NCBI RefSeq assembly: GCF_021028975.2
Contig: NC_059439.1
Span: 30,504,001 to 30,568,000, forward strand
Length of the DNA: 64,000 bases
Direction of reading: 5' to 3'
Origin: Sphaerodactylus townsendi
Lineage: Eukaryota
This document shows positions 18,663-58,665 of the stretch, in pieces (position 1 is the stretch's first letter; the number at the start of each line of letters is the position of its first letter). Below the pieces are notes generated by a model. It saw nothing but the letters and a program-made list of their open reading frames with translations, was not told where the DNA came from and made no database searches. The translations under genes were made by a program, and so were the position numbers.

Positions 18663-27371
<8,709 letters not shown>

Positions 27372-38577: not shown

Positions 38578-40480
<1,903 letters not shown>

Positions 40481-42120: not shown

Positions 42121-43638
42121 CAAGGCGATTGAACATGTATCCAGTGTAGTATTTAATGGGGGTTTGTTGGATTAAACGCACAGAGAAATCCTGATTTCTC
42201 CTTTAGGATTAAAAAAAGGTTCACTTCTCATTCACAAATGCTAATTTGCTTACTCGAATCTAGAAATGTTTCTCCAGTCACTCTCAGCCTTTCCCTGCCA
42301 AATTGCCTTTTCCCTATGTCCAGCTAAAGACCAGTTTGAAAAACGTTGAGCTAATATTGCCTCTCTCTCTCTGGGTTGTTCACACTGGAGATGTAATTTC
42401 ATTGTGATGAATGTTTTTCAGAGGCAGATATGGAGAAAATGGTCCCTTTTCTTTCTGGAAATTTGCTTTGATGTTCCTTGCACATTCAAGGGCTATGGCA
42501 CTCCACCACCAATGTGTGCTCTGCTGGGTACAGTACAGGTACCATTGGCAGGGCCATATCCACTTTTTTTGAAGGGGGGCAAAAGTGCAAGACTCCCCCT
42601 GAATATATTTTTTCTTTGTCTCATGTGTATGTATACACACACATATATACATCCTTTAATGTAATTCACTAAGGGTTGGATGTGCGTTCATCACATTGTA
42701 AACCACCTTCAGTCTCCTTACAGGAGAGAAAGGTGGGGTATAAATCCAAACTCATGTAACGATGGCTCAGTTGAATCTCTGGCCCACCAATTACTACACT
42801 GTTTCAGATTCAAGGAAATCAGATCCAAGTATGTGAATCTTACTCCTTTACATTTACCCGATCTCCCCGATTTTAATTAGATTACACTACTTGTTGCACA
42901 ATCTTGATCCTTCTCTCTGTATGATAGTGGCAGACTTTCTCCTGGAAATTACTAAACGCCAGTAGATTTCCTTCGACCTAACATTTATTTCCTGTATTGC
43001 ATATGCTTTTTAATCCATTTTTTATTATTGTTGCACTGTTGTCTATGCCAATAAAGGCTTACTATGGAAAAGAAACATTGTAAACCACCTTACAGGAGAG
43101 AAAGGTGGGGTATAACTCCAAACTCTTCTTAATCTATCTATTCTCCCCTAAAGCTGTCGAGATGCTAACCCCATTCCTGCTGGGTCTTCTTCCCTTCCCT
43201 TAACCATGCGCTTTCACGTATTAGAAGAGAGTCGATTTTCTCCCCACCCCCACCAGTTGCTGGTTCTCACTGCCAACTGGCCATGGACATAGCTTCATCA
43301 TGTCCTTCCGACTTGGAACACAGACCTGAGTTTGGAAAGGAGAGAAAACTTGTTTGACTAGTTTGGCTTTTCCGTAAATCCAGACACTAAATTCTATCAA
43401 ACAGCTTCACTTTAGACAGACGCAGGGAATATATAAAGTGTAGCTTTTATAAAAACAATAATCACAAACAGGCATTACAAAAAGCAAAAAGCGTCAGAAT
43501 AGTTTTAAAAAACAGGAAGAGGAACTCCTTGTTTGCCAGGCATGGGTAGAGCAAAGACATCAATTGCTAGAGCAAAGACCTCTCCCATGTCCCTACATCA
43601 TAGGCATCATTTCCTTTAATATTCAGACTGGGAGCCCC

Positions 43639-46600
43639 TCATCGCAATTTGATCTCGAAGCAAATGCAATTGATGCTCTGACAGTCCGGGGGCTGGTAGG
43701 CACAAGCACAGTCACAGAGTGGACACCAGCTGGGCAGGGTGGAGCAAGACCTCATGTCCAAACCCTATGGGGCAGAAAGGGGAAAAAACATACTTTTGTT
43801 AACCTGTAAGACCACCTGCATCAAGATGCCAAACACAGAATAATGACAACAGGTGTGTGTGTGTGTGTTGTACTAAAATGTGCACTAGAAAAGAAGAAGA
43901 ACTGAAATATTGTGGCTAGATCATTTATTTAAAGCATTTCTACCCTGCTTCCCCCAGTCATGTCTGAGGTGGTAAGTCATGTGCTTACCAATCTGTGACA
44001 CAGCTTTTCCTGGAGAGGCTCAAAGAAAGCACTAAATAGAAAGTGCAATCCTAAACAGTGATGTATCCACTGAAGTAAATAGGTTTCGAAATGGGCAATT
44101 ATGCACAGAACTGCACTAAAGCATCATCTCTCTGACCTTCCTCCTTTCTATTCTCACCAATTGCTGCATTTAGCCTCTCTGTTCCCCTCATCCAAATGAC
44201 TTTGCTTGATATGCAATTTTATGTTTTAGTCAATGACAGGGATGGCTGTTCCAAAGAATCAGTTTCTTTGAAGTCATTCAAGTGGCTGGCTTTCTCAAGT
44301 AGGATTTTTTTGTCTTCTGTTTTGGAACACAGTTTTCCTGCCCATTCAGCGAAGAGAGAGACCCATAAGGAAAAAAAATCACACCCAGTTTGGCTTTCAG
44401 GAGAACTGACTGCTTCCCATTTAAAAAAGCACATTTTTCCCCCAGGTCGCCTGTGACCAGTTGCTCTTTATCTCAAACTTTCAATCTAGCCCCTCTGTCA
44501 GTCAGGACTGAACTGTCATGATATATAAAAAAGAGAGAAAAGTTCACAAAAAGGTCATCTTCTAAGTTAGCAGAGGTTTGCAAAGCCCAGAGGATGGGGC
44601 AAAAAGTAGCAAAGATTGACCTTTAACATGATTGGTGAGTTCAACAGTAACTCTATACCAATGAGAGGCTGATGCCTGGGCGGGGAAAAGTATCCCTGAT
44701 GTATGTATTGTATATGCTGAGATAGAGATAGAGTCTGAGTTAAGTTCTGTATGTGCTGAACTTTGTTATTGCTGAAGAGTTCTGCATAATGATAGTCTTG
44801 TATAGAATAGACTTGTGTAACTTTGCAACTGCTAAAGTAAAAGCCTTTCTATGGAAAGAACATCTTGTGTGAAGAGTATTCTTTTCCAAGTGTACTAGAA
44901 GGTTGCAGTGTGTGCAAGAAGACTATAAATCTTCTCATCTTACTAAAGTGACTCCGCTTTAAACTCTGTTGATATGAACATGCTTTGCATTGGTGAACAA
45001 CCATAGAAACGTGCAACTCCCAATTCCCTTACAGCTACTGTGTTTCCCTGAAAATAAGACAGTATCTTATATTAATTTTTGCTCCCAAAGATGTGCTATG
45101 TCTTATTTTCAGGGGATGTCTTATATTTCTGTGTTCTGTTCGTCGGGCATGCTTCCAAACAAAAACTTTGCTACGTCTTTCTTTCGGGGGATGCCTTATA
45201 TTTCGCACTTCAGCAAAACCTCTACTACGTCTTATTTTCAGGGGATGTCTTATATTTGGGGAAACAGGGTATCTAGACAGACAGTTACTAGGGAGAGGGG
45301 AGATGAAAGAACTCACATTAGTGCAGCGGCAGCAGTCATCCAGACAGCGAGTTGGGGAAGGGAGGGCACAGTCACATGACTCCGCACAGGCCAAACAACA
45401 TTCACACACGCTTGGCAAAGACCCCTTTTGGCACGAACAACAGTTGGCACAAAGGCCGCGGGCCTACAAAGGGAGAAGATATAGAACACACAGTTGGGTT
45501 GATGCATGCAAAGTGAGCATCTTGTTTTTATTTATTTATTGTCCATTTTTATGGCTAACGTTGTCCACTTGTGCTCTTTCATTGTCACGTTTTATTGTGC
45601 TGCTTTGTGGATTTAGGACAAAAGGCTGGGGTAAGAATATTGTATACATAAAACAACCTGTGAAGACTTAATTCCGTCCCTGTTGTCTTTGAAAAACTTG
45701 GTGCATATTGAAAGGAGTCCAGCACTTCAGGAGCGGTAACAACACACATTTACAAAATTCAACTTGAACTAAATCCAAGTCTACAATGATAAACTGAAGG
45801 CTGCATATATGTTTCCGGTCATGTGCTTTGAAAGTGGTAGAAAGTGCCATCAAGATACAGCTGACTTACGGTGACCCTGTAAGGTTTCAAGGCAAGAGAC
45901 TTTGGGAGGTGGTTTTTCATTGCCTCCCTCTGCACGGGCTGAGTTCTGAGAGAACTATGACTGACTCAAGGTCACTCAGCAGACTTCATGTGGAGGAATG
46001 GGGAATCGAACCCAAGTCTCCTGATTAGAGTTCACGTTCAAGTTCAAAGACCTTTATTAGGCATTAAAACATAGCATAATCCAAATACAGTTTTACAAGA
46101 TAAAACAGGTACTCCTGTTTCAAAAATGCATACATCAGAGCGAAAGAGGAGACCAGGAAATTATTTCGTAATAGTGAGCAAGAATTTGGCCACTATGTCC
46201 AGTTGCTTGGGATTCTCTGTATTCAGAAGATAGTTCAATTTAAGATTAAAAAGGCTTGGATGGACCAGTAAGGGATCCCCTAAAAACAGGTTTGGTCTAA
46301 AATCGTTAAATTTTGGACAAACTAATAAAATGTGCTCCAATGACTTCTCAGAGGTTTGACAGTATTCACAGGTACGCTTTTGCTGTGAAGTCCACCATTC
46401 TTAACCACTACACCACACTGTATTTTTGGGAGGGCCAGCTCCTGTAGGGCATAATCAGCAATACAAATCCATCCTTTTTTTTCTTGCCCTACCAAAGGAC
46501 TGCTGCTCCCACAATACAGTGCTGTTTCCAGGGAAACCCCACTGCTGTGAGAAATACAGGGTGCCATCTTGTTTATTCCTTGAGAGCCAGCGGGGTGTAG

Positions 46601-48158
46601 TGGTTAAGAGCAGGTGCACTCTAATCTGGAGAACTGGATTTGATTCCCCACTCTGCCACTTGAGCTGTGGAGGCTTATCTGGAGAACCAGATTAGCTTGT
46701 GCACTCTGACACATGCCAGCTGGGTGACCTTGGACTAGTCACAGCTCTTCTGAGCTCTCTCAACCCCACCTACCCCACAGGGTGTTTGTGGGGAGGGGGG
46801 AGGAGATTGTAAGCCCCTTTGAGTCTCCTTACAGGAGAGAAAGGGCGGATATAAATCCAAACTCTTCTTCTTCCTCCTCCTCCTCTAAATGCACAAAAAG
46901 AGTTACGTTGCCCCTTCAGCTGCCTCTATCCCACACCCCAATTACCAGCAGGCACTGTCGCAGGATCAGGACCAGCATCAGGAGCAGAAGGTAGGAGCCA
47001 ACAGCCAAGAAGACGATGGCGGGGAGGGGCAGGAACAAGGTGGCAGCAAAAGGGAGGTCTGGTGGAGGGTTCGGCGATGGAGTCTGTAGGGTAGGGAAAG
47101 CCAGAGAAGGGAAGTTTGCAGCTTGGAGTGGTGAAGAGAAGGAAAATGGAATGAAGTTATGTGGCTGAGCCCAAAAGCCCAATTTGACTGTTTGGCTGCC
47201 ACCTTAAGGACACTTTCCTGTAAGCAAGCCCCACTGCATAACACCAAACAGGAACAAAATTATCGGAGAATGATTAAACATGCAATAAACAAGTAGATTC
47301 TCTGACATGGCTGGAAAATCAATAGGCTCCAACAATGATCTGTATTCCTAAAATTTAATGCGTGTGGAGCATCTAGCTTCCAAGTCTTTCTGGGGCTACT
47401 TCTCTCTTCTAATGAGAATCTTTCAATCTTCATCAGTCCTATGGAAGAAGTAGCCTGACTAGTGATACAAAATGCGGTATGACTACAAAAGCAATGTGAA
47501 GTCTCTGCTTACAGCCATTCTGAAATTGGGAGGAGGACCTCAACATTGAAGAGACTAAGGTTCAGCCCCTGGAGGCTCCATTGATGACCCTGGAAGAAGA
47601 AATAAATTGTTTTATCATATTATGCCAACCATTCTTGCCCTACTGTTACCCACCCAAGAAAAGGCCAACTTGCTATGGAGAGACCATGATTTACCCTGTA
47701 TCAAAGCTAAACTTTCCTTCTTTACCAAATTGTTCAACGTATTACCTCTTGCCCAATATGGACCTCAAGGAGCCGTCTCACCCATATGATATGTCTGTGT
47801 ACTTGCTCCAACAGCATAGATTAGTTTTGGCCATAAGGATGCATTAATATCTCATTGGGATCACTCATTTTTATTTCCAAAACGAAGCTGGATTTTTCCC
47901 CTCTTGCACGTCCCTTCCATAAAACACCCATCCGTCCCTTTGTCAACAAAGAACCTGCCCCCCCCCCCTTTAGTCCCCTCTTCCCACAACTATACAAAAG
48001 AGAATCCGTGGAACAGTATCGTGCCAATACCAAGAGAGCCACAAGCCCCGAGAATACAAGTCATTGACCACGCAACTGTATGGATATTGTTATCAGGGGC
48101 AGGATCCCACTTTCTTGAACATAAATCCTTCCCATTCACAGTCATACGGTCCGAGCAT
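43639..48158 (-). CDS. Uncharacterised single-pass membrane protein with cysteine-rich C-terminus (probable ortholog of the uncharacterised human ORF upstream of ALDOA, LOC112694756)
   Basis: Phase-0 exons: 47083-46946 (TPSPNPP...LPLPAIVFLAVGSYLLLLMLVLILRQCLL), 45463-45317 (ARGLCANCCSC...CECCLACAESCDCALPSPTRCLDDCCRCTN) and 43764-43639 (...WCPLCDCACAYQPPDCQSINCICFEIKLR*). The 5' end is uncertain. An exon ending at 47782 (TGG|GTGAGA) is started either by ATG 47817 or by ATG 48158 (exon 48158-48148 plus a 13-nt microexon 47794-47782). Confidence 0.85.
45038..45269. mobile_element. Tc1/mariner (Tigger/pogo-like) MITE
   Basis: TA TSD, TIR-like ends and internal gtcttattttcaggggatgtcttat repeats. 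Confidence 0.7.
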
Positions 48159-48960
48159 GTTTCGGGCGTCCCACTGTCGCCTTGGAAACCGCCGCCAAAA
48201 CAGGAAATGACCCTACGGAGCCGCTTAGCGGACAAATTTCACTGAGGCGCCACTTGTTATTTCACGGAAGTACATTCAAAGCCGACCGGAGAAGAGGGAT
48301 GGAGCAGCGGAAGTGCCTTTACGTCATCTCACGCGACGCCTCAGCATCGTTGACAAGGGTTCAACACTGTCACCCTGCCTAGTGCTTGCCGTTCACTTTC
48401 CGCCGGAAATGCGGCGCCTGCATGTGACATCACTAAACTGCTCGCTAATCCATAGCAATAGGAGGGGAGGGGCCAATCGGGATTGCGGGATTTTTAAACC
48501 ACGCCCCCTTCTGAACCGTTATCTGCCTGCCGTTAATTTCCTCAGGGTTTTGTACCGCGCACGAATCCCTGCGTCCCTTCTAATCGTCCGCCTAAGTCGG
48601 TGGCGAACCTATGGCAGGGGCTGATGTGAATTGTAGTCCATGAACATCTGGAGTGCCATAGGTTCGCCGCCCCTCTGGAAACGATCTAGCCAGCAATGCT
48701 ATTGGCTTATCGCAACCAATCAGAGCTTGGAGAGGGGAGACCTTTGCCGTCATAGCGTTGATTTTCGGTCGCGCATGCGCGTTGGGCATTCTGTGGGCAC
48801 GCTCGCGTTTCACGCCACCGCGCCTGCGTGTCAGAATGAGAGTTGGCGATCGAGGATGGGCTGCAGTGTCGCACATGCGCACAGTGCTCCTTTCCCTCAC
48901 TATTATATACGGAGTGCGGGAGTGCCGTTGACATGGAAACCGGGACTCTCGTTTTCTCTC
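48150..48960. promoter_or_regulatory. Bidirectional CpG-island promoter between the Cys-rich gene (-) and TLCD3B (+)
   Basis: CpG-rich. ETS cggaagt at ~48265 and ~48308, CCAAT boxes at ~48473 and ~48716, NRF1 gcgcatgcgc at 48771-48780, TATA-like tattatata at 48901-48909, RFX X-box-like GTTGACATGGAAAC at 48927-48940. Confidence 0.65.

Positions 48961-52918: not shown

Positions 52919-58665
<5,747 letters not shown>

What the first reader, a model, noticed from the sequence alone, without database searches (positions are those of the whole stretch)
43639..48158. Conserved uncharacterised membrane microprotein with a metallothionein-like Cys tail
Seen in sequence: a spliced ORF with a Pro-rich N-terminus, no obvious signal peptide, and one hydrophobic helix. 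It then has 22 Cys in the last 90 residues (CC, CxC, CxxC clusters) and ends CICFEIKLR. It is invisible in the ORF track as a unit. From recall, it matches the uncharacterised human ORF just upstream of ALDOA (LOC112694756; ...PAIVFIAVG...CPLCDCAC...CFEIKLR), which has no known function. Inference: reptile-mammal conservation implies a real protein inside the 16p11.2 CNV region. It could be a multiply palmitoylated membrane scaffold or a membrane-anchored Zn/Cu binder.
Basis: partly seen in the sequence, partly recalled or inferred. Interest (0 to 1): 0.8.

Follow-up and report, generated by a model that had tools for sequence, protein, structure and literature searches.

The report
Ancient cysteine-rich membrane microprotein gene
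This is a real, spliced 138-codon gene for a tiny membrane protein with a cysteine-packed tail: it is the squamate counterpart of an unstudied human gene in the 16p11.2 deletion region, and its family runs from sponges to mammals with no known function.

Summary
The tail has 22 Cys in 90 residues and ends CICFEIKLR. The 5' limit is wrong. The start codon is ATG 47518, in a 2-codon first coding exon (ATGGCT|GTAAGC). The ATG at 48158 opens a 21-codon uORF in a non-coding leader exon. One RNA-like public run shows the 47513/47083 junction and a 5'UTR intron. The other two junctions were not among the joints listed. dN/dS against gecko and boa is 0.11-0.13, and the boa aligns only at the exons. 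The gene lies between TLCD3B and ALDOA, as human LOC112694756 does, and databases name its relatives "LOC112694756 homolog". New here: the family spans Metazoa, including sponges, octocorals, annelids, molluscs, arthropods, hemichordates, tunicates and all jawed vertebrate classes sampled except birds. Two phase-0 intron positions are shared from sponge to squamate. It matches no Pfam model, no solved structure and no functional paper. Flanking charges put the N-terminus outside and the Cys tail in the cytosol. AlphaFold is confident only about the helix. Most likely it is a membrane-anchored metal-thiolate module with palmitoylated juxtamembrane Cys. This is inferred, not shown.

The parts
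48077..48641 (-). Non-coding 5' leader exon. Its 3' end is defined; its 5' end is unknown and runs into a repeat.
   Evidence: A contig of run X4 lies on 48076-48641. The joint 47588->48076 (cut +1) gives the intron 48076-47590 with GT..AG on the minus strand.
48093..48158 (-). 21-codon uORF in the leader.
   Evidence: Translation runs into two stops before the donor at 48077.
47513..47589 (-). Exon 1: 5'UTR plus the first two codons (ATG 47518-47516, then GCT), with donor GTAAGC.
   Evidence: This is the only ATGGCNGT upstream of exon 2. Gecko and boa have the same ATGGCA|GTAAG. The X4 joint 47083->47513 skips 429 bases with GT..AG.
46946..47083 (-). Exon 2 (46 codons): Pro-rich exoplasmic stub, TM helix (about 47038-46961) and the juxtamembrane R-Q-C-L-L.
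   Evidence: Translation. 42/46 residues identical to the gecko protein. The AlphaFold helix covers residues 22-49 with pLDDT above 90.
45317..45463 (-). Exon 3 (49 codons, 14 Cys): conserved block C-C-x2-C-A-E-x-C-D-C..P-S..C-L-D-x-C-C. Its length is a multiple of 3, and it is skipped in annotated isoforms of other species.
   Evidence: Translation. 44/49 residues identical to gecko. Exon-skipped 87-88 aa proteins P0011, P0065 and P0068.
43639..43764 (-). Coding part of exon 4 (41 codons plus stop, 8 Cys): the most conserved block, C-P-L-C-D-C-A-C..Q-P-P-D-C..N-C-I-C-F-E-I-K-L-R.
   Evidence: Translation. The block is nearly invariant from rays to mammals and recognisable in corals and sponges.
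43430..43638 (-). 3' UTR (at least this far).
   Evidence: A 642-letter contig of X4 lies on 43430-43763. A conserved 51-base patch at 43492-43442 is shared with gecko.

Best explanation
This is a protein-coding gene of four coding exons and 138 codons, the squamate orthologue of LOC112694756 / zebrafish si:ch211-198p11.6, and a member of a pan-metazoan family. The product has no signal peptide. Its single helix acts as a signal anchor that leaves about 17 Pro/Ser/Thr-rich residues outside (or in the lumen) and the 90-residue Cys-rich tail in the cytosol (type III topology). In the reducing cytosol the roughly 20 positionally conserved Cys, set among conserved Asp, Pro, Asn, Glu and Gln residues, most likely fold around metal ions (Zn2+ or Cu+, possibly an Fe-S cluster) into a small membrane-tethered metal-thiolate domain. 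The two to four Cys nearest the membrane (R-Q-C-L-L-x-R-G-x-C-x-x-C-C) are S-acylated. The invariant C-terminal hairpin (N-C-x-C-F-E-I) and the unusually conserved helix (P-A-I-V-x-I-A-x-G-x-Y) would be partner-binding surfaces. Status of each step: the gene, its splicing at exon 1/2, selection, orthology and phyletic range are shown; topology is inferred; metal binding, acylation and partners are inferred and untested. My rough odds are 0.97 that the gene is real, 0.75 for the topology and 0.45 for the metal-thiolate fold.
For: Gene: canonical splice sites and an exact RNA-like joint for intron 1. dN/dS is 0.114 against gecko and 0.127 against boa, and the boa aligns only at the exons. Gecko and boa share the four-exon structure and the same neighbours. 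Family: 78 hits with a squamate profile and 121 hits with a vertebrate profile in the 1.84-billion library. Named members come from sponges, octocorals, a priapulid, annelids, molluscs, chelicerates, crustaceans, a rotifer, an orthonectid, a hemichordate and a tunicate. The phase-0 introns after R-x-x-L-L and four residues after C-L-D-x-x-C-P are shared by squamates, Xenia, Ptychodera and Amphimedon. Topology: over 43 members, the 15-residue flanks hold 17 K+R on the N side and 113 on the C side, with net charge -1.35 against +1.60. N-x-S/T sequons are 2.7 times denser in the N-terminal stub. Reduced rather than disulfide Cys: the tail Cys count is even in 22 members and odd in 21. Fold rather than a mere lipid-acceptor string: the conserved positions are not only Cys. 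P83, D90, P94, P123, N129 and E134 are kept in 84-93% of 98 members, and C93, C111, C125, C130 and C132 in 96-100%. AlphaFold is confident only for the helix and leaves the tail at pLDDT 42-55 even with 98 sequences, which is what a metal-dependent fold would give.
Against: There are no metal, acylation or topology data for any member. AlphaFold often models true zinc knuckles confidently without the metal, but here it does not, so the tail may simply be disordered. No His ligands are conserved. Many Cys columns are kept in only 50-75% of members. Several invertebrate members start M-G-N-S-S-S or M-G-S-N-E-T. That pattern resembles an N-myristoylation signal and would place the N-terminus in the cytosol. 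No Pfam metal-binding family matches. The exon 2/3 and 3/4 junctions were not among the joints listed for this species.
Confidence: 0.45

Rival explanations
1. The gene and topology are the same, but the tail is a multiply S-palmitoylated 'cysteine string' that lies flat on the cytosolic leaflet. It would organise membrane domains or traffic a partner, and metal binding would be incidental.
For: Cys density is high and starts 2 residues after the helix. The tail is cytosolic by the positive-inside rule. AlphaFold finds no confident fold. From general knowledge, cysteine-string protein and SNAP25 use clustered Cys in this way.
Against: Conserved Cys extend 90 residues from the membrane, with fixed spacing and conserved acidic and polar residues between them. 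That is more constraint than lipid acceptor sites usually show. The best conserved block is the one farthest from the membrane.
Confidence: 0.3
2. The orientation is the opposite (type II). The Cys-rich part would then be lumenal or extracellular and disulfide-knotted, acting as a small tethered ligand or receptor domain.
For: CC and CxC patterns also occur in secreted Cys-knot domains (general knowledge). Some invertebrate N-termini look myristoylatable, which would suit a cytosolic N-terminus.
Against: Flank charges strongly favour a cytosolic C-side: 113 K+R on that side against 17. The Cys count is odd in half of the members. Sequons are rarer in the tail than in the N-terminal stub. Several invertebrate members carry long Lys/Ser/Gln-rich low-complexity extensions after the domain.
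Confidence: 0.1
3. The ORF matters mainly as a regulatory upstream ORF or 5' exon set of ALDOA transcripts, and its peptide has no function of its own.
For: In some mammals, Ensembl-derived UniRef entries file an 87-aa product of this ORF under 'Aldolase, fructose-bisphosphate A' (P0068). The gene lies upstream of ALDOA on the same strand.
Against: dN/dS is about 0.12. In squamates a separate SH2-SH3-SH3 gene lies between it and ALDOA. The coral locus has other called neighbours, and the sponge locus has no aldolase or TLC-domain gene within 3 kb. The protein and its introns are conserved in both.
Confidence: 0.03

Closest known systems
LOC112694756 (human 16p11.2) / si:ch211-198p11.6 (zebrafish) / Gm57854 (mouse): catalogued but uncharacterised genes
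   Same: Same family and, for vertebrates, the same locus between TLCD3B and ALDOA. Same length (about 138 aa), the same TM helix, the same Cys blocks and the same C-terminus.
   Different: Nothing of substance. In squamates a CRK-like gene separates it from ALDOA. The window's own protein was not listed in either protein search.
Metallothioneins
   Same: About 24% Cys in CC, CxC and CxxC clusters, no conserved His, and no stable fold predicted without metal.
   Different: No sequence match to any Pfam metallothionein model. This protein has a TM anchor, aromatic and aliphatic residues within the tail, and conserved Pro, Asp and Asn positions. The resemblance is compositional only.
Cysteine-string protein (DNAJC5) and other poly-palmitoylated Cys clusters
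   Same: A dense run of cytosolic Cys next to a membrane (own knowledge of that family; for this protein).
   Different: This protein already has a TM helix and needs no lipid anchor. Its Cys are spread over 90 residues with fixed spacing. It has no J domain.
Small N-terminally anchored metalloproteins such as mitoNEET/CISD and stannin
   Same: The architecture: a short stub, one N-terminal helix and a small cytosolic Cys-containing domain (own knowledge).
   Different: No CDGSH or stannin match in Pfam, and the Cys content is far higher. This is an analogy, not homology.
Keratin-associated proteins / SMCP (names that automatic annotation gave several members)
   Same: High Cys content only.
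   Different: None of the 43 members scanned matches any keratin-associated model. Those proteins lack a TM helix, whereas this family has one. The names are compositional misnomers.

Membership tests
LOC112694756 orthologue group (vertebrates) | Significant full-length sequence similarity to proteins so named | tested here: met
   Exon 3 alone gives E = 1e-18 to 6e-14 against squamate proteins named 'LOC112694756 homolog'. Per-exon identity to gecko is 42/46, 44/49 and 38/41.
LOC112694756 orthologue group (vertebrates) | Position between TLCD3B and ALDOA, on the same strand as ALDOA | tested here: met
   TLC-domain ORFs lie at 57296-58662 (+) and aldolase exons at 19853-26844 (-). The human gene order comes from PMC11354020 and PMC11781945.
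LOC112694756 orthologue group (vertebrates) | Four coding exons: a 2-codon first exon, then phase-0 introns after R-Q-C-L-L and after C-C-x-C-T-N | tested here: met
   The window, gecko L001 and boa L002 have identical boundaries. The intron 1 junction is seen in run X4.
Metallothionein | Match to a metallothionein family model | tested here: not met
   No Pfam hit at E <= 10 for the exons or at E <= 1 for 43 family members. No named Atlas cluster matched.
Metallothionein | Stoichiometric metal-thiolate clusters | not testable with these tools
   This needs ICP-MS or spectroscopy on the recombinant tail.
Keratin-associated protein / SMCP | Match to the family models; soluble, with no TM helix | tested here: not met
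   No such Pfam hit in 43 members. A TM helix is present in every full-length member examined.
CYSTM (Cys-rich TM module, tail-anchored) | A Cys-rich helix at the extreme C-terminus | tested here: not met
   The helix here is N-terminal and Cys-free, and the Cys lie in the soluble tail. There is no Pfam hit.
Poly-S-acylated cysteine-string type proteins | Most clustered Cys carry acyl chains | not testable with these tools
   This needs acyl-PEG exchange or acyl-biotin exchange.

The most novel reading that the evidence does not exclude
The window's gene belongs to a so far undescribed, pan-metazoan (sponge-to-human) family of type III membrane microproteins. Their cytosolic tail would be a new kind of membrane-tethered metal-thiolate (or Fe-S) domain. 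The human member would be an overlooked dosage-sensitive gene of the 16p11.2 BP4-BP5 interval.
Probability: 0.3. Interest if true: 0.85.

Novelty: new member of a known kind. Interest (0 to 1): 0.62.

Why it matters
The human orthologue sits inside the recurrent 16p11.2 deletion/duplication (autism, obesity, schizophrenia risk). It appears in patient gene lists only as a LOC number and has never been studied. This work adds three points. First, the protein is under strong purifying selection. Second, the family, its helix, its Cys blocks and even two intron positions go back to the base of animals. Third, it resembles no characterised family. A 138-residue protein kept for more than 600 million years with about 20 fixed cysteines almost certainly does something basic at a membrane. 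It is short, has clear orthologues in zebrafish and mouse, and gives testable predictions for topology, metal load and acylation. For genome annotation, the 'keratin-associated protein' labels on many members are wrong.

Tried and rejected
1. It is a uORF in the leader exon.

2. Pfam on each exon and on 43 members found nothing.

3. A profile search of PDB sequences gave only chance TM hits at E > 0.5.

4. The ESM Atlas returned only the family's own unnamed clusters, and no named cluster for the tail.

5. AlphaFold2 was run twice, with 25 and 98 sequences. The tail pLDDT was 42-55, so I ran no fold search; matches to such a model would be meaningless.

6. RNA evidence is limited. No run is on record as RNA. 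Of four runs laid, X1-X3 behave as DNA and X4 as RNA. One 642-letter X4 contig stops at 43763, and 286 further letters of it lie elsewhere (exon 3 plus exon 2 is 285), which is suggestive only.

7. The look-up of P0003 had no contig on record.

All full-length work used the database orthologue P0001 (gecko) as proxy, and dN/dS was summed exon by exon.

9. I did not fetch contigs for the mammalian Logan proteins P0027 and P0077, because they could be human. No human sequence was fetched or compared.

11. Literature searches for the locus names, the motifs and 'microprotein + 16p11.2' found only gene lists.
Full report
**What is in the sequence**

Each is bounded by AG and GT.
- Exon 2 (47083-46946) gives a Pro-rich stretch, one hydrophobic helix and R-Q-C-L-L.
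- Exon 3 (45463-45317) gives 49 residues with 14 Cys.
- Exon 4 (43764-43639) gives 41 residues with 8 Cys, ending C-I-C-F-E-I-K-L-R and a stop.

No Pfam model matches any exon.

A search with exon 3 found squamate proteins of 137-151 aa that begin M-A-T-P-S. For this search exon 3 was given by reference inside its open frame, so that proteins of 78-248 aa could be candidates.

The only ATGGCNGT upstream of exon 2 is at 47518-47511, reading ATGGCT|GTAAGC. Gecko and boa have ATGGCA|GTAAG at the same place. The coding model is therefore 47518-47513, 47083-46946, 45463-45317 and 43764-43639. That is 2+46+49+41 = 138 codons, the length of the gecko protein.

The ATG at 48158 opens a 21-codon ORF that stops at 48093.

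**Read evidence**

No run is on record as RNA. Four runs were laid on the stretch.
- X1-X3 have contigs that run through introns, so they behave as DNA.
- X4 behaves as RNA. It alone shows a joint 47083->47513 (429 bases skipped, GT..AG on the minus strand), which is exactly the predicted intron 1.
- X4 also shows a joint 47588->48076 (cut +1). This gives an intron 48076-47590 in the 5'UTR.

Exon 1 is therefore 47589-47513, and a non-coding leader exon ends at 48077.

The exon 2/3 and 3/4 joints were not among the 15 of 310 joints listed. One 642-letter X4 contig stops at 43763, and 286 more of its letters lie elsewhere (exons 3+2 = 285). That is suggestive and no more.

**Codon-level constraint**

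Genomic loci of the gecko Eublepharis (L001) and the boa Candoia (L002) were fetched.
- The boa aligns to the 7-kb region only at exons 2, 3 and 4.
- The gecko aligns at 89-92% identity in exons and 66-74% in introns.
- Nei-Gojobori counts were taken exon by exon and summed.

| Comparison | dN/dS | dS |
|---|---|---|
| Window vs gecko | 0.114 | 0.37 |
| Window vs boa | 0.127 | 0.76 |

These values come and show a protein under strong purifying selection.

**Identity and synteny**

Databases name the hits 'LOC112694756 homolog', 'si:ch211-198p11.6' or 'uncharacterized'. Some are wrongly named 'keratin-associated protein' or 'SMCP'.

In the window, TLC-domain ORFs lie at 57.3-58.7 kb (+) and aldolase exons at 19.8-26.8 kb (-). 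Clinical papers give the human order TLCD3B, LOC112694756, ALDOA within the 16p11.2 BP4-BP5 interval.

Gecko and boa share the neighbours, including a 251-aa SH2-SH3-SH3 gene between this gene and ALDOA. The window's copy of that gene includes the SH3 ORF 39397-39759. Two earlier notes of this scan flagged the same gene.

I inspected no human sequence, and I fetched no contig that might be human.

**Range of the family (new here)**

A squamate profile found orthologues in many vertebrate groups: turtles, alligator, placentals, marsupials, a monotreme, frogs, a salamander, a caecilian, coelacanth, lungfish, sturgeon, bowfin, teleosts, a ray and a chimaera. No bird appeared among the named hits. 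The cause is untested.

A profile built from vertebrates only, run against 1.84 billion representatives, gave 121 hits at E <= 0.001. Nearly all of those printed keep the helix or the final Cys block; the full-length ones have both.

Cluster look-ups named the following:
- Sponges: Amphimedon, Halichondria
- Octocorals: Xenia, Dendronephthya
- Priapulid: Priapulus
- Annelids: Capitella, tubeworms
- Molluscs: Pinctada, Mytilus, Argonauta
- Chelicerates: spiders, horseshoe crabs
- Crustaceans: crayfish, a copepod, an amphipod
- A rotifer and the orthonectid Intoshia
- Hemichordate: Ptychodera
- Tunicate: Clavelina

Gene structure supports true homology rather than shared composition. In squamates, Xenia, Ptychodera and Amphimedon the gene has these shared features:
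- The first coding exon has only 2-8 codons.
- A phase-0 intron follows R-x-x-L-L directly after the helix.
- Another phase-0 intron lies four residues after the C-L-D-x-x-C-P block.

The invertebrates have one extra exon before the last block. Logan contigs of one coral-like member carry the CDS without introns, so they are spliced mRNA.

None of 43 members matches a Pfam family. A profile search of PDB sequences gave nothing. The Atlas shows only the family's own unnamed clusters. The papers I could search hold gene lists only.

**Anatomy and likely mechanism**

Three blocks are conserved across 98 members.
- Block 1 is the helix, with P21, A24 and an almost invariant Y33, followed by R44-x-C46-L47 and G51-x-C53-x-x-C56.
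- Block 2 is C-C-x-x-C-A-E-x-C-D-C-x-x-P-S-x-x-x-C-L-D-x-C-C-P.
- Block 3 is C-C-P-x-C-D-C-x-C-x-C-Q-x-P-x-C-x-x-x-N-C-x-C-F-E-I. Here C111, C125, C130 and C132 are kept in 96-100% of members, and P123, N129 and E134 in 86-90%.

Topology follows from the flanks of the helix.
- The flanks hold 17 K+R on the N side and 113 on the C side in 43 members.
- Net charge is -1.35 on the N side and +1.60 on the C side.
- By the positive-inside rule the short N-terminus is exoplasmic and the tail cytosolic.
- The tail Cys count is even in 22 members and odd in 21, which argues against an obligate disulfide fold.

AlphaFold2 models the helix at pLDDT above 90. It leaves the tail at 42-55 with 25 or 98 sequences.

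Fixed Cys spacing, conserved non-Cys residues and a cytosolic location point the same way. The best reading is a membrane-anchored metal-thiolate domain with S-acylated juxtamembrane Cys (about 0.45). A poly-palmitoylated string is the main rival (about 0.3). An exoplasmic disulfide domain (about 0.1) and a purely regulatory ORF of ALDOA (about 0.03) are unlikely. None of these functions has been tested in any species.

**Verdict**

The orthology claim is right. The gene is a newly seen member of a catalogued but wholly uncharacterised family. The added value is the corrected gene model, the evidence for selection, and the finding that the family and its intron positions date to the origin of animals.

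Noticed in passing
window 38578-40432, ORF 39397-39759 (-): A CRK/CRKL-like gene lies between this gene and ALDOA. The ORF has a clear SH3 domain (E = 3e-16). Gecko and boa have a called 251-aa SH2-SH3-SH3 gene at the same place. The human gene lists put nothing between LOC112694756 and ALDOA.
   Followed up: partly
window 48093-48158 (-): A 21-codon uORF lies in the non-coding leader exon of the gene. Whether it is conserved or regulatory was not examined.
   Followed up: no
window 44970-45363, 46546-46939, 48516-48712: Very high-copy repeats (SINE-like, partly tRNA-like) sit in the introns and the leader. Their word depth in the DNA runs is 10^4-10^5 times that of the unique flanks. One of them abuts the exon 3 donor.
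   Followed up: no
P0011 (Phrynosoma), P0065 (Alligator), P0068-P0070 (mammals): Annotated 87-88 aa isoforms skip exon 3 in frame and join the helix directly to the last Cys block. This may be a conserved alternative splice. It was not testable in this species.
   Followed up: partly
P0098 (Capitella), C-terminus: The annelid protein carries a second copy of the last Cys block at its far end. Bivalve members (P0109, P0124) have Ser/Lys-rich tails of more than 200 aa after the domain.
   Followed up: no
window 47054-47542 and 47560-48105, run X4: Lower-depth contigs of the RNA-like run pass unspliced through intron 1 and the 5'UTR intron. They could be pre-mRNA, retained introns or DNA carry-over.
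   Followed up: no
L007 (Amphimedon) and L003 (Xenia): In both the sponge and the coral, the called genes within a few kb of the homologue include a ribosomal-protein gene (L16 and L18p family respectively) and a WD40 beta-propeller gene. This may be coincidence and was not analysed.
   Followed up: no
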